A DNA stretch of 64,000 nt, from positions 202,900 through 266,899 of IMG/VR virus record IMGVR_UViG_3300010938_000951, one strand, 5' to 3'. The notes beneath the pieces are model-generated. The model did not search any database. It was not told where the DNA came from and was given only the letters and a program-made list of their open reading frames with translations. Below, piece by piece: positions 38,387 to 57,171 of the stretch. The translations under genes were made by a program, and so were the position numbers. Position 1 is the stretch's first letter, and each line of letters opens with the position of its first letter.

Positions 38387-39406
38387 ATGGGAAAACAGGT
38401 GCCAAAGACAAATACACCAGTCTCAGACGCACAAATGGCACAGGCAATTGTAAATGTCTGGCAGCGTTTGTTTGGCACAGCTCCGTCTAAAGAGCAGGTG
38501 TATATGATTATGGCACAAAACGCTATTGAAACTGGTCGTGATAGAAAATCTATGCACAATTATAATGTTGGCAATATTATAGTTGGAACTACCGATCATG
38601 ATTATTTTCTTGGCGGAGATTGGATGTATGCCGACAAAGCGCAAACCGTAAAAAAACCAATCACTCAAAAATTTCGCGCCTACAATACCCTAGAGGAAGG
38701 TGTATCTGATTATCTTAATTTGTTAAGTAAAAGTAGAAGATATGCAACAGCTTGGCAGCATATTTTACATCCAGATATTCGTGCTTATTCTAAAGCACTT
38801 CATGATGCTGGATATTATGGAGCCAAGGAAGAAGATTACACAAAAGGACTGCTCGGACAATTTAAAAGTTTCGATAAAGGTAATTCTTACTCGGTTGCTA
38901 TGTCTGGTAGCCGTAATCAACCATCTACAATGGTTGCTAAACAGGAAACGCAAGATATGGGCGAGTTAAATCAAGTTATACAAAATCTAATGAATGAGTT
39001 TAGATTATCTGCCACCAATTATAATTTGAAAAAATTATATAAAGCAGCTTTACCTACTCATAATATACTGATTACAATCAAAGCTAGCGATCGTGTTAGT
39101 GCAATTGAATTCTCTCAAGTTCTTTGTGCCGCTTTGGATGAAGATTTACTTTCTACTTCATATCCTCATACTGATGGCAATGAAGTAGAAGTAGAATGTT
39201 CCATTTCTGGCCCTGAGCAAGAATGTTTTGCGGCCGTTAAACAAATGACAGAAGCTGTTGCTGAAACATTTAAAGATGCTACAACGAAAATTGGTGGAAT
39301 TACTGTTAAAACACAGTTAATTATGAATAAAAAATCATCTTATCAACCCATCAGTCCTAGAAGCGCTGATACTAACCACAGGAATTTCCTGCTTAAATTC
39401 ATTTGA
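38387..39406 (+). CDS. GH73/FlgJ-like peptidoglycan hydrolase fused to an unknown C-terminal domain
   Basis: AQNAIETG catalytic Glu, FRAYNTLEEGVSDY, ALHDAGYY...DY. Confidence 0.75.
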   Translation: MGKQVPKTNTPVSDAQMAQAIVNVWQRLFGTAPSKEQVYMIMAQNAIETGRDRKSMHNYNVGNIIVGTTDHDYFLGGDWMYADKAQTVKKPITQKFRAYNTLEEGVSDYLNLLSKSRRYATAWQHILHPDIRAYSKALHDAGYYGAKEEDYTKGLLGQFKSFDKGNSYSVAMSGSRNQPSTMVAKQETQDMGELNQVIQNLMNEFRLSATNYNLKKLYKAALPTHNILITIKASDRVSAIEFSQVLCAALDEDLLSTSYPHTDGNEVEVECSISGPEQECFAAVKQMTEAVAETFKDATTKIGGITVKTQLIMNKKSSYQPISPRSADTNHRNFLLKFI

Positions 39407-39415
39407 GGAAACACA

Positions 39416-39811
39416 ATGCCAACTGAACAACAAATTTTGGATGCGGTGCAGAATCATCAAGGTTCAGGAAAGACTTTTGCTGAATTTCTAGCTGAAGTAT
39501 TCAAGGACAAGTTCATTGAGATTTACGTTGGTGACTCTTATGAAGACGTCAGTACAGAACAAATTTCTACTACTTATCCTGCCGTATTTTGTGGAAAAGT
39601 AATAGCTGCTTATCGAGAGTGTTTAATTATTAATTGCGCTTTTGTGACTAGGAATAAAACTCTAGCTCTTGGAAATATAATGTTTATTAATGAAAGAGCA
39701 ATAAGAGCACTTAATGAAATTGATGGTAATGGCACATTAGAAGAAATGATGCTTAGAAGTAAAGAGTCTTTAGAGATTAGAGAAAGATTTATACTTAACA
39801 AAACGAAGTGA
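39416..39811 (+). CDS. small beta-rich protein, possible Sm/Hfq-like fold
   Basis: IEIYVG...VFCGKVIAAYRECLII...IMFINERAIRAL strand pattern; fold call is inference. Confidence 0.45.
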   Translation: MPTEQQILDAVQNHQGSGKTFAEFLAEVFKDKFIEIYVGDSYEDVSTEQISTTYPAVFCGKVIAAYRECLIINCAFVTRNKTLALGNIMFINERAIRALNEIDGNGTLEEMMLRSKESLEIRERFILNKTK

Positions 39812-39814
39812 GCA

Positions 39815-40567
39815 ATGAGAAACCTAGATGATATTTTACAGCTTGCTAGCACTTATGAAGAACAGTGCATACAAGATTTGGTAAAAGTGGCGAAGATTCG
39901 TCAATTACCAGATGGTAAGTATCGTGTGCTTTCTCAAAAGGGCAAAGATTTAGGTACATATAAATCTAGAAAAGCTGCCGAAAAGCGTCTTCGTCAGGTA
40001 GAGTTTTTTAAACACTTAGACAAGTCTAAAGCTGATGATCAGGGCAATGCAATTGCTCCAATTGATTTAACTAGTGCTGATGAATTTAGTTACTCTGCTC
40101 TTATGAGAAAACTACGTCAAGAAGCCTCTCCAGAACAAGTTAGAGTATTTCTTACTATTTTTAAATCACAATTTGATAAAGCTGTCAAAAGTAAAGTTCA
40201 TAAACCAGAGAGAATAGCTTTACAAAATGCTATTATCAAGTTTCATAAGATACATCCAGTAAAACTTGATAAAAAGATGGTTAAATGTGCTGCTGTGGCT
40301 GAATTAGGAGATCCTGACAGTGTTGGTAGATATTTAGCTGATATTGTTAAATTCATGTTAGCTAGATTGCCACCTCAAAAGCGCCCAAGAGCAGCACAAG
40401 TATTGAAACAAAAATTCACTGTAATGAGCGAGAATGCAATTGCAGGTAAAAACATGCCGCCAGCCGCTGTGTATGGTCAGGCAATTACTTTCGTTAAACA
40501 CGTTCTTTTCAACCAAGATGCCACATACATTAGAAATGTGTTGAATAGTTTGTCGAGGAACCTATGA
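39815..40567 (+). CDS. hypothetical head-module protein
   Basis: LVKVAK and MVKCAA motifs; small basic domain KIRQLPDGKYRVLSQKGKDLGTY. Confidence 0.72.
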   Translation: MRNLDDILQLASTYEEQCIQDLVKVAKIRQLPDGKYRVLSQKGKDLGTYKSRKAAEKRLRQVEFFKHLDKSKADDQGNAIAPIDLTSADEFSYSALMRKLRQEASPEQVRVFLTIFKSQFDKAVKSKVHKPERIALQNAIIKFHKIHPVKLDKKMVKCAAVAELGDPDSVGRYLADIVKFMLARLPPQKRPRAAQVLKQKFTVMSENAIAGKNMPPAAVYGQAITFVKHVLFNQDATYIRNVLNSLSRNL

Positions 40568-41334
40568 TCAAAAGATTTCGCCCAGTAATTCCTGGGGTTT
40601 TGTATCGTGGGTCAGCTCCAACTCCACAAGATGTGTTAGAGTTAAAAGATAAACTAGGAATCAAAAAAATTGTCAGTTTAGATAAAAAAGCTGGTGAAGC
40701 TATTTCTCGTGCTTGTAAAATGTTGGGTATTGATCAGGTAAAATTATATATTGAACATGATAGAAAAACACTTTACGATTTCCTGTCTCAAAATATGAGA
40801 AAATTATTTTTAGAAGACGGTCCTACATTTGTACATTGTCAAGAAGGAAAAGATCGAACAGGATTAGCTTGCGCAATGGTAAAGTGCAAATTTTTAGGAA
40901 TGAATCCAGAAAAAGCAATACAAGAAGCAAAATCACTAGGGTTTGGTATAGGTTTACCTCTTAATATAACGAATACTTACGAAAAGATAATACGTCATTG
41001 TAAGCCAGAGAAAGACACAAATAGTGCTGATATAGTGTCAAATGAAAGAGAATATAAGGGTGATAATCGCGACTCTTTTCTAGACGAAGCACATCAAGGA
41101 TCTTTTGCTCCTCACCTAGATCATACGCGCCAAAACCCAATGGACGCCGTCTACACTTATATAAATGATCAGTCGCCTACTCGTCAAAATTATCCAGATA
41201 CATCATTATTTCGGTATGATCCTGAGAAGGGTGATGTAATTCCTAATGTTGGCGAATTTGATAATGATGCTGGACAAAGGGGATTCGGTCCAACAGAAAA
41301 CTACAATGGTTTCTTTTCAGAGGTAGGGCACTGA
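40564..41334 (+). CDS. cysteine-dependent tyrosine/dual-specificity phosphatase family protein
   Basis: LYRGSAP, KKIVSL and catalytic HCQEGKDRTG (HCxxGxxR). Confidence 0.88.
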   Translation: MIKRFRPVIPGVLYRGSAPTPQDVLELKDKLGIKKIVSLDKKAGEAISRACKMLGIDQVKLYIEHDRKTLYDFLSQNMRKLFLEDGPTFVHCQEGKDRTGLACAMVKCKFLGMNPEKAIQEAKSLGFGIGLPLNITNTYEKIIRHCKPEKDTNSADIVSNEREYKGDNRDSFLDEAHQGSFAPHLDHTRQNPMDAVYTYINDQSPTRQNYPDTSLFRYDPEKGDVIPNVGEFDNDAGQRGFGPTENYNGFFSEVGH

Positions 41335-42251: not shown

Positions 42252-45200
42252 ATGACCATTATTAAATTAGGCGAAGCTCACGAGATTAAATTGGAAAGCA
42301 TGGAATCATGTCTTCCAGAATTGAGTGCTGATGTCTTAGAGAACTTTAGGAAATTTGCTGCTAATCTAAAGAAGATTGCACCTAAAGCAGAAGACTTTCT
42401 TTATTTTTCTGCTGTCATGATGCATGCCGCAGAAGCATCTGCATTAAACGAAGATGGTACACCAAAATTAACACTTAAAGGTGAGCCAGTACAAGTTGGA
42501 TGGGATACTAGCGGAGGCACATGGAAGTGGATTAGCAATGATCCAAGTATTCGACCATATAAAAATTCTAATGGCGATATATTTCCAGAAGCCGAATTAA
42601 CCAAAGCTTATAAAAAATGGAAGCACAAGCCTCTTTGCGTGGATCATAAATCAAGTTCAGTAGACCACGTTAGAGGCTTTATTGTTGATACTTATTATGA
42701 TCGCAATCTCAAGAGAGTAATTGCATTATGTGCCTTAGATAAGGCCGGATTCCCTCAATTAGCCAGACAAGTAGCTACTGGCGTTTCAACTTGCGTATCA
42801 ATGGGTACAGCAGTTGGTAGGGCAATTTGCTACGATTGTGGTAGAGTCGCTCGTGCAGAGCAGGACTTCTGCAATCATATGAAAAACAAGACTTGCTACG
42901 GCGAAATCAACGTAGACCTTAATCCAATTGAGTTGTCTATCGTTGTAAATGGTGCTGATCCTAGAGCCAACATCAAAAACATCATCGCCGCAGCTAACAC
43001 CATGAATACGTACCTTGAAAATCGTGCTAAGGAACTAGAAAAACTTGCCGATCTCAAGTTTCATGCTACTATTGGTGTAGATGACCCACAAGGTCATGAG
43101 GGTGGCGGTTCTGCAACTTTCAATGTTCAAGCAAATGACATTGACAAGTTCAAAACTGATTTAGATGAAGCATTTAGGAAAGTTCAAGAGTTTAAAAACG
43201 TAAAAATTTCTGAACTAGATACTAATTCTTCAGCATCTAATCAATCGTCGGGTTCGATTGCCATGGATGAAGGCGCACCCACGGATTCTGGATTGGCTCT
43301 CCAAACTCCGCAAACTAACAGGTTTGCATCCGCAGATGTAGAGGCGGAATCATTGGCTGAGCTTCAGCAAGTTACTGCATCAATTGAAGCAACGTTAAGT
43401 CAAATGAAAAAGAGCTTGGATAAGTTAGCTAAAACTACTTCTACAAAAACACAAGAGGAAAATATGTCTGGATCAAAAGAAATTAATAAGCAAGCTTATT
43501 TCCAGGGCGGCGGTGGCGTAAATGAGCCAACTCCAGGTCAAGTTAAGTATCCAAAAGACGGACTCAATGAGCAGCTTCGTGAGAACGAGGATAAGCACAT
43601 GGTGGGTCAGCCTCCTTTCCCTGAGGTAGGTCCAGTCGATGGTATGCACCCTTCACCAGCTTCGGCTGATCCTTCTGGGGAGTTAGAGCGTAAGAAGATG
43701 CTCGCTCGTGCAGAAGCAGAAGAGCGTGCTCTTAAGCGTAATGCCATTGTAAATATGGTTAAGGATACACTAAAGAACAAAGAAGCCTACTGGCAAGGTG
43801 GTGGCGGTGTTAACGAGCCAACTCCAGGTAAGGCAAAGTATCCAAAGGATAAACTAAACGAAGAACTTCGTGATTACGAAGATAAGCAGATGGTTGGTCA
43901 ACCACCATTCCCTGGCGTTGGTCCAGTTGATGGTTTGCATCCATCTCCATCTTCAGCAGATCCAAAAGACGAATTAAAGCGCAAGCAAATGCTCGCACGC
44001 GCACAACTACGTGCAAGATTCGTTAAGGCTGCAAATAATGATGGAACTCAAAACAAAGCAAAGAGCGCTTGGGAAGTATTCCTAGGTGATAAGCTATTGT
44101 TAACTGCTTCTGTTGATGAACTATCCGGAGGCAATACTGCAGTTCTATATGATTCAATTGCAACCAAAGAATTTGGTACTAAGTTAATTGAAAAAGTTAA
44201 GGTACAAGGCGCTGATGCTGTATCTAAACTAATCAAGAAGGCACAAGGCGCTCCTCCAGCTCCTCCTCCAGGTGACCCATCTAGCGCAGCTCCTCCAGCC
44301 GATCCAGGCGCAGGCGCTCCAGATGCTGGTCCTCCAGCAGAAGATACGGGTGGTTCTGGCGATCCAAAGCAAACTGCCGTCGAACTTTCTGAAAAAGTAA
44401 GAGACCTAAGCTCTGATCTAGTCGAAGCTGTTCGTGCTTTAACTGGCGAACAAGCTGAGATGGGTGGTCCAGAAGCTGGTGGTGTTGGTGGTCCTGCTGG
44501 TGGTCCAATGGCCGCTGATGACCAAGATGCTCGTAAGAAGAAGGATGACAAAGAATCTACCGCTTCTGATAGCTTCAGTGCTAATACTCTTAACACTTTA
44601 AGAAAAGAACTTAATGGCGCACTAACTCATGCCATGAAAGAATCTATTGCGGAACTTGCTGAGCACAAGCAAGAACTAGATATGATTGCTGGTATGTATG
44701 ACAAGGGTGCTGTAACTCCATCTAACCAGGAGTTTGTGGGTACTATCGTAGAAGATGCATTAAATGAAGCTAAAACTGCCGTAGCAGATGGTTTCAAACT
44801 AATGACAGCTTTTGTTAAGTATGCTCGTGGTACTAAGGCCATTGTCAAGCGTGCTGAAATTGAATCAGAATTGCAAGCACTAGCCGAAGGAGATACCGAA
44901 ATGAGCGACAAAGAAGATAGTCACTCCGCAGACGGCGGTGACTTGATGGGACTAATTAACGACACCAATGCAGATTTGGATGCCGTTCAAGAGATGATGG
45001 GTGATGACCAAAGCCACGAAGGCAGTTTAGATGAACTTCTAGACGAACCAGTAGGCGAAGAATCACTAGGAGGTCTTGAAGGAGAGGATCTACTAACAGG
45101 TTTGGCTGACGATAACGACCTTACTTTCGAACAAGGTGAGAAAGTTCCACCAGAGTTGGCCGGAAAGAAGTTAACTATGGCATCTTATGATGATAGAGCT

Positions 45201-45947
45201 GGTCGTGCAGCCCTCAGAGCCAAGTTGGCCGCTGATGCTCTCGGCAAGGAAGAGGATGGAGAAGTCCAAGATATGTCTAAACAAAAGTTTAGTGATATGT
45301 TAGACGCTTCTCAGAAGCACACTGATGGTCAAACTGAGTTGGATGTTAAACCATCTGATAGTCTTGGATTAGTTGAAACTGTTCAAGAAGTAAACAAGGC
45401 CATGATGGATGTTGCTAAGGCTCCACCAAAGGTTCGTAAAGAAGCAGAAGTTATTCAGAGACTTGTTTCTGAAGGTAAGCTTGATCCAAAGGACGTAGAT
45501 GCTCTAGCATCCTACGGATTAGATGGCGAAGCAGTTGCTTACTGGAAGAAGTATTATGGTGAAGTTGATGGCGGAAGTGAATTTGCTAGTGAATTGGTAA
45601 AGGAACACGTCAAGTCAGCAATGGAAGAAGAGCTTAACAAGTTCCGCGTCAAGTTAGCTCGCGCATACGAACTTACCTATGACATGGTTGATCGTGGACT
45701 ATGCCGTCATGACAGAGCAACTATCTCTGATCAAGTTGACCAAATTATGAAGTTTAATGATGATGCATTCGAATCTCTAAAGAAGGTTGTTGCCCGTCAT
45801 GAACCAGGTGCCCTCCGCAAGGCAGCAGGTACCATTCCACAAGTTGGTCTTAGAGTTGATGGAGAATTCTCTCCAGCTCAAGCAGTAGAGGATGACTCTT
45901 ACGCCCAGTTGTCAGCCCTCTTTGGTAACAAAAAGGGTGTGTTCTAA
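42252..45947 (+). CDS. prohead maturation protease fused to long scaffold
   Basis: PLCVDH, GFIVD, VSMG catalytic Ser, CYDC...CNHM insert, ELSIV..GADP; then about 950 aa of acidic/coiled-coil scaffold. Confidence 0.82.
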   Translation: MTIIKLGEAHEIKLESMESCLPELSADVLENFRKFAANLKKIAPKAEDFLYFSAVMMHAAEASALNEDGTPKLTLKGEPVQVGWDTSGGTWKWISNDPSIRPYKNSNGDIFPEAELTKAYKKWKHKPLCVDHKSSSVDHVRGFIVDTYYDRNLKRVIALCALDKAGFPQLARQVATGVSTCVSMGTAVGRAICYDCGRVARAEQDFCNHMKNKTCYGEINVDLNPIELSIVVNGADPRANIKNIIAAANTMNTYLENRAKELEKLADLKFHATIGVDDPQGHEGGGSATFNVQANDIDKFKTDLDEAFRKVQEFKNVKISELDTNSSASNQSSGSIAMDEGAPTDSGLALQTPQTNRFASADVEAESLAELQQVTASIEATLSQMKKSLDKLAKTTSTKTQEENMSGSKEINKQAYFQGGGGVNEPTPGQVKYPKDGLNEQLRENEDKHMVGQPPFPEVGPVDGMHPSPASADPSGELERKKMLARAEAEERALKRNAIVNMVKDTLKNKEAYWQGGGGVNEPTPGKAKYPKDKLNEELRDYEDKQMVGQPPFPGVGPVDGLHPSPSSADPKDELKRKQMLARAQLRARFVKAANNDGTQNKAKSAWEVFLGDKLLLTASVDELSGGNTAVLYDSIATKEFGTKLIEKVKVQGADAVSKLIKKAQGAPPAPPPGDPSSAAPPADPGAGAPDAGPPAEDTGGSGDPKQTAVELSEKVRDLSSDLVEAVRALTGEQAEMGGPEAGGVGGPAGGPMAADDQDARKKKDDKESTASDSFSANTLNTLRKELNGALTHAMKESIAELAEHKQELDMIAGMYDKGAVTPSNQEFVGTIVEDALNEAKTAVADGFKLMTAFVKYARGTKAIVKRAEIESELQALAEGDTEMSDKEDSHSADGGDLMGLINDTNADLDAVQEMMGDDQSHEGSLDELLDEPVGEESLGGLEGEDLLTGLADDNDLTFEQGEKVPPELAGKKLTMASYDDRAGRAALRAKLAADALGKEEDGEVQDMSKQKFSDMLDASQKHTDGQTELDVKPSDSLGLVETVQEVNKAMMDVAKAPPKVRKEAEVIQRLVSEGKLDPKDVDALASYGLDGEAVAYWKKYYGEVDGGSEFASELVKEHVKSAMEEELNKFRVKLARAYELTYDMVDRGLCRHDRATISDQVDQIMKFNDDAFESLKKVVARHEPGALRKAAGTIPQVGLRVDGEFSPAQAVEDDSYAQLSALFGNKKGVF
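43488..44003 (+). repeat. 75-aa internal duplication in the scaffold (43488-43712 and 43779-44003)
   Basis: KQAYFQGGGGVNEPTPG...MLARA versus KEAYWQGGGGVNEPTPG...MLARA, period 291 nt. Confidence 0.95.
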
Positions 45948-48744: not shown

Positions 48745-48839
48745 GCTAAAGCCTCTGAAATAGCTGCATATTCTTTTATTTAGTATGAGCTTTCTATATT
48801 ACAGCATAATATAGACAATCTATTCATTTGAGGCCACCA

Positions 48840-49982
48840 ATGACTTTTAAACACACGAAATTTGAGGATTCTCCAACTATGCGAGCCTTAGAAAAAGTTG
48901 CCAAGGACAAGGGTTTAGTTAAACCGGAAACTCTTCAAAAGAAGGCTTCTGTTGCTAAAAAGGCTAATTATGCTCCTACTGATAATCTCATGGAGAATAT
49001 TCTTAAGCTTTGTGCTGGTTTGAGAGACGCTGGTCTTGTAAAAGAAGCTGCTGAAATTGAAACTAACTATCTTAATTATAAGCGCGCCCAAACTCTATAT
49101 GAAACTTCTAAAGAGAAGGGTGAAGATTTAGTACAATCCGCTCATCCAAAAGGAAGCCATAAATTGGAAGGCGTTGATGGTGAAGAGGCAACATTTGAAG
49201 ATATTATTGATCAACATCTTAAAATAATGAAGGCCATAGAAAAGAAGCCAACTGGAAAATTATCAGAAGCTAAAGCTAAAGACATTATTAAAGCAGTCAA
49301 AATGGCCTTGGCACAAGCTGCCACTATTGATGACGTTAAAAATATTACACGCCAAATCAAAGAAAAAGTTAATCAGATTAATGAACTAGCAAGCCCAGAA
49401 CTTACAATTGGTATGGGAATGTTTGTTAACAGCATAAATTCCAAAATGGATAATCCAACCGTTTACAATCTAACCGAGGCAAAGGGTGTATTGGCTCGTT
49501 TGTATAAGAGATTGGATCCAAGTTTTATTAGTGGCGCTACTTGGGGAGCTGGTGGCTTATCCGATTATACTTGGGGTAGAGTTAAGCCATTATTTTCTCT
49601 AATCAACAATTTACTATCTCAAGCCATAGATAAGCGTAGAAGCTTTGATGAATCTGAGCAAAGTAAATTAGAAGGTAGACCAGATCCAAATGCCCCTCCT
49701 CCACCACCAAAAGCAGATCCGGCCGCAGATATGGTAAGAAAAATTAATGGCCTTGCAGCGCAATTTGATGCTGTAGCAAATCAGATTGCATCGGATGATC
49801 CAAAAGATACAGAAGCTCTTGAAGGCACAAAGAAGTGGCTAAGAGACAAAGCCGGTGCTCTCAGAGGGCTCGCTAGTCAATTCCAAAACGAAACTGATAA
49901 GGAAGCAGTTACGAACGTATATCAAGCCACATTAAATAAGTATCAAGCTGCTCTTGCAAAAACTCAACAGGATTGGGCATAA
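48840..49982 (+). CDS. putative internal head/ejection protein
   Basis: Helical; multiple KxA motifs; LYET...AHP segment shared with 53852..55099. Confidence 0.6.
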   Translation: MTFKHTKFEDSPTMRALEKVAKDKGLVKPETLQKKASVAKKANYAPTDNLMENILKLCAGLRDAGLVKEAAEIETNYLNYKRAQTLYETSKEKGEDLVQSAHPKGSHKLEGVDGEEATFEDIIDQHLKIMKAIEKKPTGKLSEAKAKDIIKAVKMALAQAATIDDVKNITRQIKEKVNQINELASPELTIGMGMFVNSINSKMDNPTVYNLTEAKGVLARLYKRLDPSFISGATWGAGGLSDYTWGRVKPLFSLINNLLSQAIDKRRSFDESEQSKLEGRPDPNAPPPPPKADPAADMVRKINGLAAQFDAVANQIASDDPKDTEALEGTKKWLRDKAGALRGLASQFQNETDKEAVTNVYQATLNKYQAALAKTQQDWA

Positions 49983-51208
49983 TGTCAAAATACTTAAAGT
50001 ATTTTAAATCAGAATTTGAGAAGTATGCGCAAGATATTGGCGCACCTCCTCCTAGACCATCAAGAGGTGGTGGAGCTGCCGCTAAGCCAACTGCTGCCAA
50101 ACCGACCACCACTACTACTGGTCGTGGTGGTATTGGTGGACCACCAGCGCGTCCAAGTGCTGCCCCAGCACGTTCTGGTGGCGGTGGTTATGTTGATATT
50201 AAGCCAATTAGAAATATGCAACTTGCTATTCAAAATTTGGCAAAAACAATATCTGCAACGATTAATTATGATGCGCTTTTAAAATCTATGCAAACTCCAC
50301 CTGGTGCGCCTACTGATCAAGATAAAAGTTCTTTTCAAGCAGGTTACGGTAAAGATATGTTTAGTAACTTTATGATTAATAACTATCTACATCGTGGTGA
50401 CGTAAAAGGCGTTGAGTACGATACCGATCCGAAACGAACAAAAATGTTAGATAAGAAACCTTCTGATCTTAAAAGCATGTTTGTTATTTTAGATTCTTTA
50501 CAAAGAATTGGCCGTGAAAAATCAGAAGCATTTGCTGATGGTAATTGGGGTCCGCGTACCAATAATGCGCTAAAGAATGTTTCTGCCATTGCTACTGCCA
50601 TTAGTAGACTTGGCAGTGAATTAGGCATGCAATCTGAAACCTTTGATGTTAGCAAGATTGCTGAATTAGGATCTCTAATTCCAGCAAATGAAACAGATAT
50701 TTCTTTGCAAGAAAAAATTCAAACAGCCCCAAAAATTACCCAAATTTTGACTGGTGTTCGTGATTTATTTCTAGATTTTAAACAGCAAGTGTTTATGAAT
50801 CCTACATATCGTAATTTCATTGAAGGTAAAGCTCCAATGATGACATTTGGCCCACAAAAAGAAAAAGGCGTAGGTGAAACGGCTGGTGAGAAACCAATTT
50901 TAGCAGACCTACAAAAAAGTGGCCCACAAAGTAGATATGTTCAACACCCATCAGCAACTATGTCAGTTACTATAGATAAAAAACTAATTCCTGTACAATG
51001 GCAAAATATGGATGTTAGACCATTCTCTATTACCGCTGCAGATTTGTTAAGCCCACAAGCTTTTGATAATTGGGTTGCAAAAAGCAATATACTAATGACT
51101 CTTAAACAACAAAATCCAGAAAGTTGGAATAATGTGTTAAGATCCATTTTAACACAAGTAAAAGCACAAGTTGATCAAAAATTAGGATCAGCACAGCAAG
51201 GAGCATAA
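49982..51208 (+). CDS. putative internal head/ejection protein
   Basis: FEKYAQ motif at residues ~12-17 followed by a G/P/A linker. Confidence 0.6.
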   Translation: MSKYLKYFKSEFEKYAQDIGAPPPRPSRGGGAAAKPTAAKPTTTTTGRGGIGGPPARPSAAPARSGGGGYVDIKPIRNMQLAIQNLAKTISATINYDALLKSMQTPPGAPTDQDKSSFQAGYGKDMFSNFMINNYLHRGDVKGVEYDTDPKRTKMLDKKPSDLKSMFVILDSLQRIGREKSEAFADGNWGPRTNNALKNVSAIATAISRLGSELGMQSETFDVSKIAELGSLIPANETDISLQEKIQTAPKITQILTGVRDLFLDFKQQVFMNPTYRNFIEGKAPMMTFGPQKEKGVGETAGEKPILADLQKSGPQSRYVQHPSATMSVTIDKKLIPVQWQNMDVRPFSITAADLLSPQAFDNWVAKSNILMTLKQQNPESWNNVLRSILTQVKAQVDQKLGSAQQGA

Positions 51209-51209
51209 T

Positions 51210-52703
51210 ATGAGTTTCATTTATGATAAAAACTTACTGGCTGAGCTAATTAAAAGCGCTATAGATCATGAAGTAAAATTTAACAAACATGGTCAACTAG
51301 CAGCCGATCCAAATGTAAATTTAGAGTTTCGTAATTATCTAACTTTAACAAAAAAGTTGGCAGATCAGTTAGAGCAAAAATATTTTCCTTCTGGCCCAGG
51401 TGAAACTGTTGTAACTACTGGAACTGGTAAAGAAGCGCAATTAGGAGTTCCTGATTTATCCAGTTTGGGTAATTTTTTTGACTTTATGGTAAATAATCAA
51501 ATCATGGTTGACAATAAAAGAATTGTCTACAGTGCCAATGAGCAGCCACCAGATCCAAGATTATGGAAGCCAGTCACAGCTCAACAAATTAAGTTCATGA
51601 TGGAAACGCAAAATGAACAAAATGAGCGTACACAGTTTCAAGCTGACTATTATGTCAATCGTGATTTATTAGTTAAGTACGTAAATTCTATTTTACGAGA
51701 CTCCTCTAAAGAAGATGATGAAACTCAAAAATTTATAAAGACAATGCTTGGCGCTCGTCTTCAGGATATTAATCGTATCTTTAGAACCAAATTAACTACC
51801 GAATATAAAGAGCCAGAAAAAGTTCTACCAGATAATACAGTACTTGATAACACGCCAAAAGATATGGACCCACAAACATGGTTTAATCGTGGTAATATTC
51901 CATTAACCATTGGCGATCTTAAAGGCGGAACTGCATTTAATGCTTGGTTAAGCGGTAATAGTATTTCTATTAAGGTTGATAATCGTCAAATGATGATTAA
52001 TCATCCAGAATTTGATCGTTGTGCAATAATGAGAATTCTAAATTCTAGAGCAAAATACAATCTAGATAGAGCTACATCTGCACAAGCTCAACAAGTTGCT
52101 ACTATTTATGCGCAGAGAATACAAGCTCTTGCTGGTGAACTAAAGTGTGATTTGAGTGATAAATCAAGTCAACAGCAGCAACAACAGCAACAGGGTCAAG
52201 GACAAGGTTTGTCTGGTGCTTCTCCACAAATCTTGCAACAACTTTCCAGCTTGCGTCCATTTAATGCTCAATATATTAGCTTTCCAGAAATCAAGAAGTT
52301 TATTGAATTATATACTAAATATGCAAATGACGCAGATGTTACCAAGACCGCTGCAGATTTAAATGGATATATGGAAGCTTTCAAATCATATCTTGGAATG
52401 CGTGGAGACACTTTCCAGCTTACCAATATAGATAATAATAGATTTAAGAGTATGCTTAAGAATCCATCTGCTGCTCGCCAAGCTGCTGATCTTTTGTATG
52501 ATATCGTTGTATATGCTGGCCAGTTATATCAACGTCTAGTTGTTTCATTACAAACTGTTGCACAAGACGCCGAAAGAGCAAAGTATATTGATTATCGTGG
52601 TATGCAGCAACAGGTAACTCCTGGCGGCCCACAACAAACCAATGTTACTGATTTAAATGATTTGAGACAAAGTTTATCTAGAGAATGGATGGCTAGAAGA
52701 TGA
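51210..52703 (+). CDS. putative internal head/ejection protein
   Basis: 497-aa helical ORF with poly-Q tract; FNKHGQ motif variant. Confidence 0.6.
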   Translation: MSFIYDKNLLAELIKSAIDHEVKFNKHGQLAADPNVNLEFRNYLTLTKKLADQLEQKYFPSGPGETVVTTGTGKEAQLGVPDLSSLGNFFDFMVNNQIMVDNKRIVYSANEQPPDPRLWKPVTAQQIKFMMETQNEQNERTQFQADYYVNRDLLVKYVNSILRDSSKEDDETQKFIKTMLGARLQDINRIFRTKLTTEYKEPEKVLPDNTVLDNTPKDMDPQTWFNRGNIPLTIGDLKGGTAFNAWLSGNSISIKVDNRQMMINHPEFDRCAIMRILNSRAKYNLDRATSAQAQQVATIYAQRIQALAGELKCDLSDKSSQQQQQQQQGQGQGLSGASPQILQQLSSLRPFNAQYISFPEIKKFIELYTKYANDADVTKTAADLNGYMEAFKSYLGMRGDTFQLTNIDNNRFKSMLKNPSAARQAADLLYDIVVYAGQLYQRLVVSLQTVAQDAERAKYIDYRGMQQQVTPGGPQQTNVTDLNDLRQSLSREWMARR

Positions 52704-53800
52704 TATCTAATAGTGAAGTCAGTTTTTGTGTAGATACACTGCTTGTAGAGACAATTTTGGGAGATCCAAAACTTTACAAGAAGGCTGGCTTCGTCCAAGA
52801 TTTGCTTGGTAAAGTTAAAGAGTATTTTAGTCACCAAATTGATCCACAAAATCCAGTTAAAAGCGTAATAGATATTTTAGCCCCAGGTGCTTTGTGGTTA
52901 TTATTTCAATCTATTGGTATTGGTAAATGGGGTTTTCTATTAGGTTTATTAATGGATGTATTCCACGTTGATGTGAGTGGTATGCTTACTTCTCTATGGA
53001 ATAAAGTTAAAGAGATGGTAGGTAGTGGTAAAAAAACTTCTTCATCTGAGATTGATGCCGCAACACAATCTACTGTTCAAGAGTTTAATAAGCCGCCAAC
53101 ACCCGAAGAGGAACAAAGAGGGCTTGAAGCTCTTAAACAAAAACAGCAAGAGCAACAAACACAAAAGGCTGATGATCAAAAAGTTTATAGTTCACTTGAA
53201 CTATTAGAAGATGCCAGATTGTTTAGATTGGCTCTTATTGATTATGAAACTCAGGCACTTAGACTTACTAAAGAAGGGTTTAATAAAACGGCTGGATTTT
53301 TTGGCGATACTAAAGCTAAAGGCACCAGTTTATTAGGCAAAATTTTTGGTTGGATTATTAAGCTAGCATTAGCTTCTGCTGGTTTGATGGTTGCAGGCGA
53401 TGTTGCTAATGAAATGTTAGGTAGACCAAGTGCTTTGAGTGGAACTTATCAACGTGGCCAAGAGTCCTCTGAATCACAAGCTCCTGCTCCACCACAAGCC
53501 AAACAAACCAAGTTCCCACCAAAGGGAGATGGCCCATTACCAGCATCTATACCAATAGTTAATAATCCTCAGAATATTGAAAACTTCTTAGTTCAAATTA
53601 CTAAAGATGTATATTCTGGATTAGATAATAAAGAAAATCTTATCAGAAACTCACCAGCTTTTCAGGCTGTTAAAGATAATATTGTTTGGTACAATACTCA
53701 TAATGAGGGCTCGTCTGTTACATTTATTCCGGGCTTATTTAAAACGAAAAAGCAACTGGTAGACTACTATATTGATGATGTAGCTAAAAGTGCTCCATAA
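52700..53800 (+). CDS. putative membrane-inserting ejection protein
   Basis: Hydrophobic segments (ALWLLFQSIGIGKWGFLLGLLM; IFGWIIKLALASAGLMVAG) after LYKKAG and FNKTAG motifs. Confidence 0.6.
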   Translation: MISNSEVSFCVDTLLVETILGDPKLYKKAGFVQDLLGKVKEYFSHQIDPQNPVKSVIDILAPGALWLLFQSIGIGKWGFLLGLLMDVFHVDVSGMLTSLWNKVKEMVGSGKKTSSSEIDAATQSTVQEFNKPPTPEEEQRGLEALKQKQQEQQTQKADDQKVYSSLELLEDARLFRLALIDYETQALRLTKEGFNKTAGFFGDTKAKGTSLLGKIFGWIIKLALASAGLMVAGDVANEMLGRPSALSGTYQRGQESSESQAPAPPQAKQTKFPPKGDGPLPASIPIVNNPQNIENFLVQITKDVYSGLDNKENLIRNSPAFQAVKDNIVWYNTHNEGSSVTFIPGLFKTKKQLVDYYIDDVAKSAP

Positions 53801-53851
53801 AATCGGGCATAACAGAACATATCATTATAATTTCTTTTTAGGTGAAACCAC

Positions 53852-55099
53852 ATGAGAAAAAGCGAGATATTTGAAAGTTTTGTCAAGATTGCCCAAGAGA
53901 GGGGACTTGTGTCTCAAGCCGATCATGCTGAGCACACTGAGACATCTTTCTCTGAGACTAATCCAAGATTTGATTCGTTAACTATTGAGCAAATCAGCAA
54001 ACTTTACAATACCAAACCACAGCAACCAAAAGATATGGAATACAAGCGCAATATTATCGAAGATGCGCATCCAGAGTCGGTTGTTGTTTCACCTTCTTAT
54101 GATAAATTAAATGGTCTCGTTGAAAACGAAAATGAAGGCCAAGCTATTCGCGCCCGCATTGTTATGAAGGATCCGGATGGCCATTTGATCAATCGTAAAT
54201 ATGCCAAGAAGAACTTATTGCTTTCTTTGGTGCGCGTTGCTAATGAGCTAGACGCTCGCAACAACGATGAACTTCGTAAATTGGCTGATGTTTGTTTAGC
54301 GCAATCCAGCGGTCAAATGGAAAAGAAAGCTTATGCTATTGCTATTGTGGCAGCCGTTGCTGTAGTATTAGGTGCCATTTATGCAAAACAACATTTACGT
54401 TTTCATAGCGATGGTTGGGCAAGAGATTATGAAAAGACTATGTCTGAAATTGATGATTTGTTAAATTCTAACACAAATTGGGGTGTTGGTTATGCGTACA
54501 CCCCACAATTCATTCAAATTGTGAATAATCTTAAAGCAGAATTAGGAAAACTAAACGCTGTAGTTATGAAGGCAATTCCAATCTTAGAAAAGATGGAAAC
54601 ACCCCGCAATGCTGAAGAATTAAAGGCAATGATTGATAAGCCAGAAACTCAAGAAGCCGCTAAGGTATTACAAGAATTCCAAGATCAAATGAAGAGTTCT
54701 TATCCATTCATTAATACTGTTATTACTAATTTTGGCAATGAAGGATTTAAACAGCGCGCAATTGCTCAAAAAGGTTTTCTATCATCTCTTGTTGACTCCT
54801 CCGAAATTTTGCATGGCGGCAAGGGATTAGTAGCTGATGATTTTGATGATGTTAAACATGCTCTTCAGACTTTAAAAGTAGATTTGACTAATTTAGCCAA
54901 GACTTTGCAAGGCGCTGAAAGTGTTAAACAAAAAGCTCAACAGGATTTGTCTTCTGGCCAGGCAGAGGTTGCTTCTACATTTACGCAACCTGCGCAACAA
55001 TCTGGTGGTACACAAGCCCCAGGTGGAAAACCAAGTGAGCCAGGCAAAGATATCGAAGAAGAAGCAAAAGGCATATTAGGAGGTCTTTTCGGAGGATAA
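53852..55099 (+). CDS. putative membrane-inserting ejection protein
   Basis: MEKKA directly followed by hydrophobic YAIAIVAAVAVVLGAIYA. Confidence 0.6.
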   Translation: MRKSEIFESFVKIAQERGLVSQADHAEHTETSFSETNPRFDSLTIEQISKLYNTKPQQPKDMEYKRNIIEDAHPESVVVSPSYDKLNGLVENENEGQAIRARIVMKDPDGHLINRKYAKKNLLLSLVRVANELDARNNDELRKLADVCLAQSSGQMEKKAYAIAIVAAVAVVLGAIYAKQHLRFHSDGWARDYEKTMSEIDDLLNSNTNWGVGYAYTPQFIQIVNNLKAELGKLNAVVMKAIPILEKMETPRNAEELKAMIDKPETQEAAKVLQEFQDQMKSSYPFINTVITNFGNEGFKQRAIAQKGFLSSLVDSSEILHGGKGLVADDFDDVKHALQTLKVDLTNLAKTLQGAESVKQKAQQDLSSGQAEVASTFTQPAQQSGGTQAPGGKPSEPGKDIEEEAKGILGGLFGG

Positions 55100-55247
55100 T
55101 ATGGGCATAGCCCAATATCTTTTGTGACTCTTAAATATTTTTTTATTGAAAACATATCAATAAAGAAGTATCTTCGTAGATTTTGTAAGTAATAGGTGTA
55201 AGTAACCATGCCCCTTGAGGCATTTGAAGATTAAATAGGAAAATACA

Positions 55248-56000
55248 ATGGCTCTAAAACTTTTACAACCAGGCATTCAGCCACTAGGTCAGTTTGATGG
55301 TCTTGATGCAGATGTTCTACAAACCAAGGGTGGCGAAGTTGTTACTTTCACATACGTAACCACTTCTGGTCAACCAGGTGTTTTCACCGCAGGTCAAGAC
55401 CAAGCCGCTTATGACCAGTTTGACGGTTATGTCAACGCATCTGGTACTTTTAAGCGCCCAGCAGTAACCAAGACCCATGCCGGTCTTAACTTTGCCGCTC
55501 GTCCATTGATGCTATCTGACGATGGTATTCAGGGATACGGAACTCTCTTCGGAGCAGTTGTTGGTGGCGCTGTTGGTCAACAAGTAAACGGTCCAAACAG
55601 CTACACTGGTGCTGTACTTGGCCCTCACACTGCAACCGGCTCTGGTAAGACCACTTGCTGGGATAAGCCAGGTCTCTATGCAGTATCCTTGGACGCAACT
55701 CACTCCAGCTTGCAGCCAACCAACACCACCCTAACTGGCGGTGATGCTCTAGGCTTTACAACTGGCGGTCTTTTGACTCAGGCAACTAACGCTGCTTCTG
55801 TATCCTCCAACGGTTCTGCCGTAGGCTCTGGTGGTGTCGCTGTTGTTGTTGGTCGTCTAGTAGAGTTCAACACCAACCAGTCTTTGGTAACCACTCCAAA
55901 CTACTTGGTTGCTGCTTTGAACAGCCCATCTGGTAACGTCTCTTCTGTACAACCACGTGCATTTACATTCGCTACCATCTACTTTGCTCCACCAGCATAA
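55248..56000 (+). CDS. probable capsid decoration/minor capsid protein
   Basis: Directly upstream of MCP; G/T-rich beta protein; TATGSGKTTCW motif paralogous to 48055..48744. Confidence 0.6.
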   Translation: MALKLLQPGIQPLGQFDGLDADVLQTKGGEVVTFTYVTTSGQPGVFTAGQDQAAYDQFDGYVNASGTFKRPAVTKTHAGLNFAARPLMLSDDGIQGYGTLFGAVVGGAVGQQVNGPNSYTGAVLGPHTATGSGKTTCWDKPGLYAVSLDATHSSLQPTNTTLTGGDALGFTTGGLLTQATNAASVSSNGSAVGSGGVAVVVGRLVEFNTNQSLVTTPNYLVAALNSPSGNVSSVQPRAFTFATIYFAPPA

Positions 56001-56131: not shown

Positions 56132-57145
56132 ATGAATATGTTTAGTGGTAAAGGCGAAATTAACGCCTCATCTTTCAAAGATGCATTGCAGGCATTGGTA
56201 AAGTATGCAGCCATTCTCGAAGAGAATGTTCCTGCCAACCAAGGTCTCGCCGGCCAACCAGCATTGAGCGATGAGAAGCGCGATGAGTTGATCACTCGTG
56301 CTATCATGACTCAGGACGGAAAGATTGCTCTTGCTCAGGCAATGGCAAACCCAATCCGTAGAAACTTAGATTACCACGGCATTGCCCGTCGTGCTCTAGT
56401 AGTTGATCCACTACCACAGGGAGCAATCCCAACCTACGACCGTGATATTGACGTAGCTGCTGTTGTTATTTCTAGCAACGGTACTGGTCCAGAATCCCGT
56501 GTCTTCGGTGACCGTGTAGTAGTTCCTGAGTTTGAAATCTACGCCAACCCAACGGTTCGTATCGCTGAGGTAAAGCGTCGTAGATTCAACGTCATTGACA
56601 GAGCAGTTCAGAAGGCTCGCCAAGAAATCATGGCCCAGGAAGATGCAAACATCTTCGCAGCTCTTGATGCGGCAGCCTCCGTTGAGAACACTCTCACTGA
56701 CATCGCCGATGCAGGTTTGCTAAAGCGTGACTTAGTTGAAATTAAGCAACAGATTGACCGTTGGGACTTGGTAACCACCAAGTACTTTATGAACATCAAC
56801 GAGTTCACTGACATCCTCAAGTGGGGATCTGGTGGTGGACAAGGTGTTGGCGGAGGAGACTTCGATCCAGTAACCATGCGTGAAGTTCTACAAACTGGTC
56901 TATACGCCCACATCTGGGGCACTGACATTATGGTCAGCAAGATTGTTCCACCTGGAACCATCTACGGTGTAGCCGATCCTGAGTTCGTTGGTGTAATGCC
57001 AATCCGTCAGGACATCGAAGTTCTACCAGCAGACGAGCCAAAGCAATTGAAGCTCGGATGGGTAGTCTCTGAGATTATCGGTATCGCCATTGTAAATCCT
57101 CGCGGATGCGCAGCAGGCAGAAAGAGCGTTGTTATCGGAGCCTAA
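56132..57145 (+). CDS. major capsid protein (HK97 fold)
   Basis: 337 aa; position after protease/scaffold and decoration genes; biased codon usage; strong terminator follows; ARRALVVDPLPQGAIPTYDRD, PEFEIYANP, RQEIMAQEDANIF pattern. Confidence 0.82.
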   Translation: MNMFSGKGEINASSFKDALQALVKYAAILEENVPANQGLAGQPALSDEKRDELITRAIMTQDGKIALAQAMANPIRRNLDYHGIARRALVVDPLPQGAIPTYDRDIDVAAVVISSNGTGPESRVFGDRVVVPEFEIYANPTVRIAEVKRRRFNVIDRAVQKARQEIMAQEDANIFAALDAAASVENTLTDIADAGLLKRDLVEIKQQIDRWDLVTTKYFMNINEFTDILKWGSGGGQGVGGGDFDPVTMREVLQTGLYAHIWGTDIMVSKIVPPGTIYGVADPEFVGVMPIRQDIEVLPADEPKQLKLGWVVSEIIGIAIVNPRGCAAGRKSVVIGA

Positions 57146-57171
57146 TTAAGCTACTGATTAGCTAAAAGCGT

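What the first reader, a model, noticed from the sequence alone, without database searches (positions are those of the whole stretch)
48840..55099. Five-gene ejection-like block in which cleavage would unmask fusion-peptide-like N-termini
In 53852 the site MEKKA (54317-54331) is followed immediately by YAIAIVAAVAVVLGAIYA. In 52700, LYKKA is followed by GFVQDLLG and a hydrophobic hairpin, and FNKTA (53279-53293) by GFFG...LLGKIFGWIIKLALASAGLMVAG. 48840 and 53852 also share an LY.T...AHP...K.P.G.L pro-region. Inference: membrane-active channel proteins are made as soluble, capsid-addressed zymogens and armed inside the head by the prohead protease, conceptually like cleavage-activated fusion proteins of eukaryotic viruses.
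Basis: partly seen in the sequence, partly recalled or inferred. Interest (0 to 1): 0.72.

Follow-up and report, generated by a model that had tools for sequence, protein, structure and literature searches.

The report
Megaphage head proteins with cleavage-like motif
Five unannotated genes between the scaffold and capsid genes of a phage-G-like giant phage probably encode proteins packed inside the head; all carry a conserved short motif that looks like a head-protease cutting site, and in one of them it sits directly against a membrane-spanning helix, but neither cutting nor packaging has been shown.

Summary
The sequence observations are real. The window is the end of a 267-kb contig of a roughly 490-kb phage-G-like megaphage. 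The five genes (48840-55099) lie between a 1231-aa protease-scaffold fusion and the major capsid gene. They are syntenic in more than 30 metagenomic relatives and match no Pfam, PHROG or NCBIfam family.

The motif [L/F]-x-K-x-[A/G] is 3.4 times denser in the head block than in the rest of the genome. It starts within residues 5-30 in 8 of 12 head-block proteins against 14 of 286 others, and it is kept in relatives even where its position shifts.

In gene 53852 it is invariant in 118 homologues and abuts a conserved transmembrane helix. The N-terminal domains of 48840 and 53852 are homologous (HHalign 95%). This N-domain is conserved, while the C-terminal part evolves fast.

My reading is that these are T4-IP or phiKZ-like internal head proteins with protease-removable addressing segments, two of them carrying membrane-active parts. 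Cleavage, virion location and ejection are inferred, not shown.

A positive-inside charge bias argues against a soluble precursor and supports a rival model of a membrane tether released by cleavage. Only 53852 would gain a truly hydrophobic N-terminus. I rate it a new variant of a known kind.

The parts
42252..45947 (+). Protease-scaffold fusion protein (1231 aa). The S78/HK97-like prohead protease domain is aa 1-250 (42252-43001), with invariant D131-H132, S183 and a CxxC...CxH insert. Two repeats of about 95 aa (43476-43745 and 43767-44036) each open with K-x-A followed by Y[FW]QGGGGVNEP. Conserved [LF]xKxA copies lie at block boundaries, e.g. LEKLA at 43035-43049 just after the protease domain.
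   Evidence: PHROG 18299 (head maturation protease) E 1e-11 and phrog_2774; alignment with 19 relatives and phage G gp19; motif conservation 14-18 of 19; repeat HMM
48840..49982 (+). Gene 1 (380 aa from the ATG). The conserved N-domain is aa 1-156 (48840-49307), with LEKVA (48888-48902) and LQKKA. The fast-evolving C part is 49308-49979. The domain boundary reads V-[KR]-x-[AV]-L-[AG]-Q, which is not a canonical motif copy.
   Evidence: Alignments. The N-domain profile finds 1012 cluster representatives, always at the N-terminus. All pairs of N parts are similar, against only 15% of pairs of C parts. Homology to the 53852 N-domain. No canonical motif at the boundary
49982..51208 (+). Gene 2 (408 aa). 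An N-terminal helix ends in FEKYA (50015-50029), followed by a Pro/Gly-rich linker. The conserved core holds DG.WGPRTN.AL (50498-50584), which resembles a peptidoglycan-binding domain. There is no signal peptide or TM segment.
   Evidence: Alignment; motif present in 12 of 13 homologues; PG_binding_3 below threshold, E 0.1; ESM Atlas feature hits to PG_binding_3/1 clusters at score 0.74, a lead only
51210..52703 (+). Gene 3 (497 aa). The N-terminal segment ends in FNKHG (51279-51293), followed by Q and a variable linker. The rest is helical, with no hydrophobic segment.
   Evidence: Alignment; motif present in 16 of 16 homologues, shuffles give 3.5
52700..53800 (+). Gene 4 (366 aa). Features in order: LYKKA (52772-52786); amphipathic helix; moderately hydrophobic hairpin aa 52-88 (52853-52963); LTKEG and FNKTA (53264-53293); third hydrophobic segment aa 211-233 (53330-53398); confidently modelled small alpha/beta C-domain (53492-53797).
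   Evidence: K27 and A29 are at least 90% conserved. Flank charges of the third segment are +2.05 (N side) against -0.21 (C side)
53852..55099 (+). Gene 5 (415 aa). Features in order: FVKIA (53879-53893); conserved N-domain paralogous to that of gene 1 (53852-54241); invariant DxCLxQ; MEKKA (54317-54331); TM helix aa 161-181 (54332-54394); helical-bundle C-domain aa 186-378 (54407-54985); Gly-rich tail GILGGLFGG.
   Evidence: Deep alignment of 118 sequences; AF2 model with pLDDT below 50 at aa 157-161, a helix at 161-181 and a confident C-bundle; segment identities and hydrophobicity; flank charges
56132..57145 (+). Major capsid protein (337 aa). It has an N-terminal extension of about 42 aa that phage G gp27 lacks, carrying FKDA (56174-56185) and LVKYA (56195-56209).
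   Evidence: phrog_2522 E 3e-81; 54% identity to phage G gp27 from residue 45; K-[DE]-A is conserved in the extensions of PaBG and Rctr197k; the PaBG capsid protein loses about 20% of its mass on maturation (PMC7412058)
45974..48744 (+). Four further head-block genes. 45974 is acidic/basic, with three DDNDARKKK repeats also found in the scaffold. 46675 and 47153 are paralogous helical proteins with N-terminal FNKLA and LRKQA. 48055 is very conserved (79-98% identity).
38387..41334 (+). Context between the portal and protease genes. A glucosaminidase-domain protein (38387-39406) has no signal peptide and no adjacent TM protein. Gene 39815-40567 has a conserved N-terminal LVKVA. Gene 40564-41334 encodes a DSP/tyrosine-phosphatase-like protein.
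   Evidence: Pfam PF01832 E 4e-9 and PF13350 E 1.3e-8; alignments; TM scan

Best explanation
The five genes encode internal proteins of the prohead of a phage-G-like megaphage. [quoted passage not shown]

Each starts with a short helix ending in [L/F]-x-K-x-[A/G]. Genes 48840 and 53852 also carry a paralogous, conserved N-domain of 130-155 aa that is poorly modelled as a monomer. These N-terminal parts would address the proteins to the assembling core or shell.

The S78-like protease fused to the scaffold would then cut after the small residue of the motif. The same motif is repeated at block boundaries of the scaffold and in the N-terminal extension of the capsid protein.

The expected products are as follows. 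Gene 53852 gives a fragment of aa 161-415 whose first 18-21 residues are an Ala/Val/Ile/Gly-rich membrane helix ahead of a helical bundle. Gene 52700 gives one or two fragments carrying marginally hydrophobic helices and a small C-terminal domain. On infection these would leave through the tail and act at the envelope, together with a possible peptidoglycan-binding protein (49982).

Shown: gene order, homology, motif statistics and conservation, and hydrophobic segments. Inferred: addressing, cleavage at the motif, retention in the virion, ejection and membrane insertion.
For: - Head-module position between the protease-scaffold gene and the capsid gene, with conserved synteny in more than 30 loci. 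The capsid protein is 87-100% identical across them while the five genes are 21-80% identical.
- Motif density is 5.4 against 1.6 per 1000 aa (Poisson 2e-7). Shuffles give 7.3 against 26 observed.
- N-terminal occurrence in 8 of 12 head-block proteins against 14 of 286 others (Fisher 9.5e-8). All five genes have it. The motif ranks first of 60 permutations of the pattern.
- Motif presence is retained where its position shifts: 18 of 19, 18 of 19, 12 of 13 and 16 of 16 homologues, against 3.5-6.2 expected from shuffles.
- Scaffold copies lie at block boundaries, including directly after the protease domain and directly before each YFQGGGG repeat.
- K158 and [AGS]160 are invariant next to the TM helix in 118 sequences, in a segment with pLDDT below 50.
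- The N-domains of 48840 and 53852 are homologous. The N-domain is conserved while the C part diverges fast.
- Precedents: T4 capsid-targeting sequences, and 100-130-aa propeptides of SPN3US/phiKZ ejection proteins that are removed by the prohead protease (PMC5694885). The capsid protein of relative PaBG is processed.
- A head-module peptidoglycan hydrolase is present here, and its positional analogue gp22 was detected in phage G particles (PMC12484599).
Against: - There is no experimental datum for this clade; every close relative is a metagenomic contig.
- The motif was defined on the same proteins that were then tested.
- The position that aligns with the mature start of phage G's capsid protein (about residue 43) has no K-x-A, so the motif may not be the only site, or may not be the site at all.
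- The motif could be a binding element rather than a cutting site.
- The 53852 helix (KD 2.4) would be recognised as a signal anchor during translation, and its flanks obey the positive-inside rule. That fits a resident membrane protein better than a soluble precursor packed into a head.
- The protease-substrate complex prediction gave no answer.
- Phage G has no homologue of the five genes.
- Fold searches found nothing.
Confidence: 0.45

Rival explanations
1. Membrane tether and release. Proteins 53852 (and 52700) insert into the inner membrane of the infected cell with the N-terminus in the cytoplasm and the C-terminus outside. The conserved N-domain binds the nascent prohead, much as T4 proheads assemble on the membrane through gp20/gp40. 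The protease cut at MEKKA, exactly at the cytoplasmic face of the helix, then releases the matured prohead. The helix and C-domain stay behind in the membrane and are never packaged.
For: - Positive-inside bias: N flank +2.25 against C flank -0.58 for 53852, and +2.05 against -0.21 for the third segment of 52700.
- The TM helix is strongly hydrophobic.
- The N-domain is the most conserved part, at 67-76% identity against 49% for the C-domain, alongside a nearly invariant capsid protein.
- The invariant motif lies exactly at the helix boundary.
- T4 proheads are membrane-bound and leave the membrane after proteolysis (PMC5694885).
Against: - Gene 48840 has the same N-domain but no membrane segment.
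- The three other genes are soluble yet carry the same N-terminal motif.
- Part of the N-flank charge comes from the motif's own lysines.
- There is no homology to T4 gp40.
- The model does not explain the first motif and hairpin of 52700.
Confidence: 0.2
2. Core or scaffold components only. The five proteins build the very large internal core needed for a giant capsid. The protease degrades them and they are expelled before DNA packaging. The hydrophobic stretches serve oligomerisation, and there is no role in the next infection.
For: - Position next to the scaffold gene.
- Helical, low-complexity architecture.
- Multiple motif copies, like the scaffold.
- T4 gp22, gp67 and gp68 are handled this way.
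Against: - The C-domains of 53852 and 52700 are folded and well modelled.
- A bona fide 18-21-residue apolar helix is conserved as hydrophobic but not in sequence.
- The fast divergence of the C part of 48840 is unlike structural scaffolds.
- There is a possible peptidoglycan-binding motif in 49982.
Confidence: 0.15
3. The motif is a docking element rather than a cutting site. [L/F]-x-K-x-A would be a short linear motif that binds the capsid interior, portal or scaffold, and the proteins would be incorporated uncleaved.
For: The enrichment, conservation and N-terminal position would equally fit a binding motif. The mature capsid start inferred from phage G has no such motif.
Against: - More than nine copies lie at block boundaries of a protease-scaffold polyprotein, which must be separated from its protease.
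- One copy lies directly after the protease domain.
- A small P1 residue with a hydrophobic P5 fits the substrate style of assemblin-fold proteases. This point is from my own knowledge and was not tested.
Confidence: 0.12
4. Proteins 52700 and 53852 are lysis or superinfection-exclusion membrane proteins that merely sit in the head module, as the lysis genes of phage G do.
For: In phage G an endolysin (gp22/23) and two small proteins with N-terminal TM segments (gp24, gp25) lie between the scaffold and capsid genes.
Against: - There is no homology to those proteins.
- They are large (366 and 415 aa).
- There is no adjacent lysin; the glucosaminidase is 13 kb upstream with no TM neighbour.
- Many small TM ORFs elsewhere in the genome could be the holins.
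- They share the N-domain and motif with soluble head-block proteins.
Confidence: 0.05

Closest known systems
T4 internal proteins (IPI, IPII, IPIII, Alt) with capsid-targeting sequences cut by gp21
   Same: A short N-terminal addressing peptide ends in the prohead protease's own motif. The addressing part is conserved while the cargo varies strongly. The genes lie in or near the head module. The proteins are packed in the head and injected with the DNA (PMC5694885; the polymorphism of the T-even IP loci is from my own knowledge).
   Different: There is no sequence homology. The motif is [L/F]-x-K-x-[A/G] rather than L/I-x-E. The protease is S78-like and fused to the scaffold, not S77. Two members have 130-155-aa N-domains. 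Two carry hydrophobic membrane segments. Nothing has been shown experimentally.
phiKZ / 201phi2-1 / SPN3US inner-head ejection proteins with long propeptides (protease gp175/gp245, MEROPS S80)
   Same: Giant myoviruses with several paralogous inner-head proteins. Their N-terminal propeptides of 100-130 aa are removed by the prohead protease and are thought to address the protein to the prohead.
   Different: There is no homology. The cleavage motif there is S/A/G-x-E. Those phages have a different capsid lineage and protease family. No membrane helix at the new N-terminus is reported in the paper I read.
T7 gp14/gp15/gp16 and P22 gp7/gp16/gp20 ejection proteins
   Same: Head-internal proteins that leave with the DNA and build or assist a conduit across the envelope. 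T7 gp16 includes a peptidoglycan-cleaving activity. All of this is from my own knowledge.
   Different: Those are podoviruses. T7 has no prohead protease. There is no homology, and the genes here belong to a myovirus-type capsid lineage (phage G, PaBG).
Adenovirus protein VI and cleavage-primed fusion or lytic peptides of eukaryotic viruses
   Same: The concept only: a virion protease cuts inside the particle and frees a membrane-active N-terminus. For 53852 the predicted P1' residue starts an apolar Ala/Gly-rich helix (35% A+G).
   Different: Unrelated proteins and hosts. No trimeric coiled-coil signature was tested. For 52700 the new ends would be amphipathic, not apolar.
T4 gp20/gp40 membrane-bound prohead initiation
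   Same: A membrane-anchored step of head assembly that ends when the protease acts. This fits the positive-inside topology found here.
   Different: There is no homology. T4 gp40 is not known to be a protease substrate (own knowledge). This is the rival model, not the favoured one.

Membership tests
HK97-type (MEROPS S78-like) prohead protease, for aa 1-250 of 42252-45947 | Sequence match to a prohead protease family | tested here: met
   phrog_18299 (head maturation protease) E 1e-11, phrog_2774 E 1.6e-13; homologous to phage G gp19, E 4e-36. There was no Pfam hit at E<=0.01.
HK97-type (MEROPS S78-like) prohead protease | Conserved catalytic His and Ser | tested here: inconclusive
   D131-H132 and V182-S183-M184-G185 are invariant in 13 sequences including phage G gp19. 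Their assignment as the catalytic pair is inferred, not aligned to a solved protease.
Capsid-targeting-sequence internal proteins (T4 IP type) | N-terminal peptide ending in the protease recognition motif | tested here: met
   All five genes have a conserved [LF]xKx[AG] starting within residues 6-30. That this motif is the protease site is itself an inference.
Capsid-targeting-sequence internal proteins (T4 IP type) | Cleavage by the prohead protease and presence of the mature form in virions | not testable with these tools
   No cultured relative and no proteome. The complex prediction gave no answer.
Capsid-targeting-sequence internal proteins (T4 IP type) | Sequence homology to T4 IPs or phiKZ inner-body proteins | tested here: not met
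   No PHROG, Pfam or NCBIfam family. tblastn of the 52700 protein against 50,697 phage records found no match; blastn of 48800-56100 also found none.
T7/P22-type ejection proteins | Homology or a shared fold | tested here: not met
   No family hits. Foldseek against PDB and BFVD gave only generic helical matches and one uncharacterised homologue.
Peptidoglycan-binding domain (PG_binding_1/3), for 49982-51208 | Pfam score above the gathering threshold | tested here: not met
   PG_binding_3 scores 13.2 bits against a cut-off of 24.6, E 0.1, at aa 173-201, in 1 of 13 members. Atlas feature hits to PG_binding clusters score 0.74, which is a lead only.
Holin / lysis cassette | Small TM protein adjacent to an endolysin | tested here: not met
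   The proteins are 366 and 415 aa. The nearest lysin-like gene is 13 kb upstream. There is no homology to phage G gp24/gp25.
Cleavage-primed fusion-peptide proteins (class I style) | Protease site immediately N-terminal to an apolar peptide | tested here: inconclusive
   At the sequence level this holds for 53852 but not for 52700. Cleavage itself is unproven.
Cleavage-primed fusion-peptide proteins (class I style) | Soluble metastable precursor, with oligomeric coiled-coil refolding | not testable with these tools
   The positive-inside bias argues against a soluble precursor. Oligomeric state was not examined.

The most novel reading that the evidence does not exclude
A bacteriophage uses its prohead protease to arm membrane-inserting proteins inside the capsid. 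The cut at an invariant K-x-A would create a free, apolar, Ala/Gly-rich N-terminus on 53852, and would release the membrane-active halves of 52700. These are then delivered through a contractile tail to open or stabilise the passage across the host inner membrane. This would be a prokaryotic counterpart of adenovirus protein VI or of cleavage-primed fusion proteins. The conserved paralogous N-domain would act as a transferable capsid-addressing module for fast-evolving cargo in a widespread clade of roughly 490-kb megaphages.
Probability: 0.25. Interest if true: 0.75.

Novelty: new variant of a known kind. Interest (0 to 1): 0.55.

Why it matters
Megaphages of the phage G type are widespread, but only phage G itself is cultured, and their head-internal proteins are unknown. 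This analysis gives four things:
- a candidate cleavage or addressing motif for their protease;
- a conserved N-terminal addressing domain found in more than 1000 protein clusters;
- a short list of candidate injected proteins, including two membrane-active ones;
- specific, cheap tests, namely co-expression with the protease domain and N-terminal mapping.

If the motif is the protease site, mature virion proteins could be predicted across this whole clade, and the N-domain could be tried as a tag for packing foreign proteins into heads, as the T4 CTS has been used. If the tether-release rival is right instead, it would explain how giant proheads leave the membrane.

Tried and rejected
1. I tested whether the two roughly 95-aa scaffold repeats (YFQGGGG...HPSP) are related to the 'AHP' N-domains of 48840 and 53852. 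HHalign gave probability 0.1%, so this is rejected.
2. I considered an alternative cleavage motif [A/G]-Q, because Q follows the motif in several proteins and Q151 of 53852 is invariant. It is not separable from K-x-[AG] in most cases, is not conserved in 52700, and is only half conserved in 49982. I kept it as a caveat only.
3. The V-[KR]-x-[AV] boundary of the 48840 N-domain and LVRVA of 53852 lack the P5 hydrophobic residue or the P3 Lys. None of 13 homologues matches the pattern at the 48840 boundary, so I do not count them.
4. I tested 'diverse unrelated cargo' behind the 48840 N-domain. The C parts are mostly linked by weak similarity (134 of 147 in one single-linkage component), so this is one fast-evolving domain rather than swapped cargo. 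There was no Pfam domain in 10 representatives.
I re-sent it with window sequences only, which the rule allows, and the verdict was 'no answer'.
6. Fold searches of both AF2 models (PDB, BFVD) and three ESM Atlas searches gave nothing usable except the weak PG-binding lead.
7. Family HMMs found no homologues of the five genes in the head region of phage G.
8. I looked for papers on cleavage sites of related proteases (phage G, PaBG, mycobacteriophage cluster C). The only finding was that the PaBG capsid protein loses about 20% of its mass.
9. I did not use read mapping or sequencing-run searches, because they would not bear on cleavage.

Full report
**What the window is.** The window is the last 64 kb of a single 266,899-bp contig. 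Almost all genes are on the + strand. The head module reads as follows:
- large terminase, 33047-35092;
- portal, 35170-37044;
- a glucosaminidase-domain protein, 38387-39406;
- a tyrosine-phosphatase-like protein, 40564-41334;
- a 1231-aa protein (42252-45947) whose first 250 residues are an HK97-type prohead protease and whose remainder is scaffold-like;
- a 250-aa protein, 55248-56000;
- the major capsid protein, 56132-57145.

The capsid protein is 54% identical to gp27 of Bacillus phage G and more distantly related to those of PaBG, Lu11 and the cluster C mycobacteriophages. The exact 53852 protein also occurs on a 490,849-bp contig, and many relatives lie on contigs of 340-506 kb. The contig is therefore probably half of a phage-G-sized megaphage. 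All close relatives are metagenomic, and none is annotated.

**The observation.** The peptides are at the stated coordinates. Gene 53852 has one strongly hydrophobic stretch, aa 160-178, with a Kyte-Doolittle mean of 2.39. Gene 52700 has a moderately hydrophobic hairpin (aa 52-88) and a third segment (aa 211-233, 1.80). The other three genes have none. None of the five genes hits Pfam, PHROGs or NCBIfam, and the nucleotide and protein searches I ran against 50,697 phage records found no match.

**Relatives.** Thirty-two IMG/VR loci carry the same block in the same order. The capsid protein is 87-100% identical across them, while the five genes are only 21-80% identical. In phage G, gp19 is the protease homologue and gp21 is scaffold-like, but the five genes have no counterpart there.

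**The motif.** In a 118-sequence alignment of the 53852 family:
- K158 is invariant;
- position 160 is A, G or S in every sequence;
- position 156 is hydrophobic in 117;
- the following 18 columns are always hydrophobic (KD median 2.0) although only 34% identical.

The AF2 model places residues 157-161 in a low-confidence break between a helix (139-153) and the membrane helix (161-181).

All five genes have a conserved copy starting within residues 6-30: LEKVA, FEKYA, FNKHG, LYKKA and FVKIA. So do the capsid protein (FKDA, LVKYA), 46675, 47153 and 39815. The statistics are:
- 26 copies in the 12 head-block proteins, against 7.3 +/- 2.6 in composition-preserving shuffles;
- 5.4 copies per 1000 aa, against 1.6 in the rest of the genome;
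- N-terminal copies in 8 of 12 head-block proteins, against 14 of 286 others (Fisher 9.5e-8);
- first rank among 60 permutations of the pattern classes.

Where the exact position is not conserved, the motif is still kept. In the linker before the third hydrophobic segment of 52700, 18 of 19 homologues have at least one copy, against 5.8 expected.

In the protease-scaffold protein, conserved copies lie directly after the protease domain (LEKLA, 262-266), directly before each YFQGGGGVNEP repeat, after the second repeat, and before two low-complexity linkers. This is what one expects of the site at which a prohead protease frees itself and dismantles its scaffold.

The motif was refined on these same proteins, so the p-values are optimistic. 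Conservation and turnover with retention are the more independent arguments.

**A caveat on the site.** Phage G's capsid protein starts at the position that aligns with residue 43 of the window protein. The related PaBG capsid protein loses about 20% of its mass on maturation. The window sequence around residue 43 has no K-x-A. The motif copies at residues 15-26 could be additional cuts within a propeptide, as happens in T4, or the motif might be a docking element rather than a cutting site.

**The shared 'pro-region'.** With deep alignments the N-terminal regions of 48840 (aa 10-156) and 53852 (aa 3-130) align at 94.9% probability, E 4e-8, over 119 columns. Shallow alignments had given 64.5%. 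A profile of the 48840 N-domain finds 1012 cluster representatives, 417 of them at E<=1e-30, and the domain is always at the N-terminus. All pairs of N parts are similar (median 57% identity), but only 15% of pairs of C parts are detectably similar. In 53852 the N-domain is 67-76% identical to relatives against 49% for the C-domain. Despite this conservation the N-domain is poorly modelled as a monomer (pLDDT 43-77), which fits a region that folds on a conserved partner.

**What cleavage would expose.** Only MEKKA abuts an apolar helix. That helix is 35% Ala plus Gly. After LYKKA the new end would be amphipathic (KD -0.10), with the hairpin 22 residues further on. After FNKTA the new end has KD 0.18, with the hydrophobic segment 16 residues further on. 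The hydrophobic segments of 52700 are marginal and contain charged residues.

**Against a soluble zymogen.** Across the 53852 family the 15 residues before the helix carry a net charge of +2.25, and the 15 after it carry -0.58. For the third segment of 52700 the values are +2.05 and -0.21. This is the positive-inside pattern of proteins inserted from the cytoplasm with the N-terminus inside. Together with the high hydrophobicity of the 53852 helix, it gives real weight to the rival in which these proteins are inner-membrane proteins of the infected cell and cleavage at the membrane face releases the prohead. T4 proheads are membrane-bound until proteolysis. Part of the N-side charge, however, comes from the motif's own lysines.

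**Context that favours packaged, injected proteins.**
- Gene 49982 has no signal peptide or membrane segment, yet contains DG.WGPRTN.AL. This gives a sub-threshold PG_binding_3 match (E 0.1) and Atlas feature hits to PG-binding clusters (score 0.74, a lead only). Such a domain would be useful only outside the cytoplasm.
- A glucosaminidase without signal peptide, and without a neighbouring membrane protein, lies in the same module, along with a phosphatase-like protein.
- In phage G the head-module peptidoglycan hydrolase gp22 was detected in purified particles.
- Conserved addressing parts with polymorphic cargo are the hallmark of T4 internal proteins. Long propeptides removed by the protease are documented for SPN3US and phiKZ ejection proteins.

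**What failed.**
- The protease-substrate complex prediction gave no answer.
- Fold searches and Atlas searches were uninformative.
- The scaffold repeats are not related to the N-domains.

**Verdict.**
A head-module-specific, conserved motif that is best read as the prohead protease site, together with a shared addressing domain, makes these genes a new, unannotated family set of internal head proteins of the T4-IP / phiKZ kind.
- The specific claim that cleavage arms soluble precursors into membrane-active channel proteins is plausible for 53852, weaker for 52700, and contradicted in part by the topology signal.
- I put 0.45 on the internal, processed head-protein model. Within that, the arming reading gets about 0.25 overall.
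- The rivals get 0.20 (tether and release), 0.15 (pure core proteins), 0.12 (docking motif without cleavage) and 0.05 (lysis or exclusion proteins).

Noticed in passing
window 30144-30896 (+): A 250-aa protein starts MSVNKQAYFQGGGGVNEP. This is the module that opens each of the two scaffold repeats, and the repeat HMM hits it at E 2.8e-8. It lies upstream of the terminase gene and may be another head protein that uses the same module and motif.
   Followed up: partly
whole contig; window 53852-55099: The exact 53852 protein is also on a 490,849-bp contig, and relatives sit on contigs of 340-506 kb. The 266,899-bp 'genome' is probably a partial assembly of a phage-G-sized megaphage.
   Followed up: partly
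window 40564-41334 (+): A dual-specificity/tyrosine-phosphatase-like protein (Y_phosphatase3 E 1.3e-8, PTP-SAK E 1.5e-7) is encoded between the portal and protease genes and is conserved in relatives. It is a candidate packaged enzyme.
   Followed up: no
window 38387-39406 (+): A glucosaminidase-domain protein (PF01832, E 4e-9) lies in the head module, with no signal peptide and no neighbouring TM protein. Phage G also has a peptidoglycan hydrolase (gp22/23) in its head module, and gp22 was detected in particles.
   Followed up: partly
window 46154-46297 and 44520-44543: The motif D[NQ]DARK(A)KK occurs three times in the acidic/basic protein 45974-46660 and once in the scaffold protein. Its meaning is unknown.
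   Followed up: no
window 56001-56131 and 57146-58484; loci L016, L018-L020, L023, L031, L033: The spacing around the capsid gene varies among relatives. The gap from the 55248 homologue to the capsid gene is 70-150 bp in most but 1.0-2.7 kb in seven loci. The gap from the capsid gene to the next conserved gene ranges from 0.8 to 4.0 kb. In the window this second slot holds a CCA-adding tRNA nucleotidyltransferase on the minus strand (57208-58452, phrog_2244 E 5e-67). In L033 the capsid match is only 171 aa, which may indicate an interrupted gene.
   Followed up: no
window 54998-55096 (C-terminus of 53852) and 53294-53305: The Gly-aromatic strings GILGGLFGG (GLFGGLFGK in relatives) and GFFG recur at the C-terminus of 53852 and after FNKTA in 52700. 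They resemble glycine-zipper or fusion-peptide-like strings. I did not test this.
   Followed up: no
locus L001 (phage G) 10468-10956 and 9543-10445: Phage G gp20 starts MSKKISRLKKTA, and the protease gp19 has LVKTA at residues 41-45. The same motif may therefore be used in phage G. This would be a possible independent test set, given the published particle proteomics.
   Followed up: no
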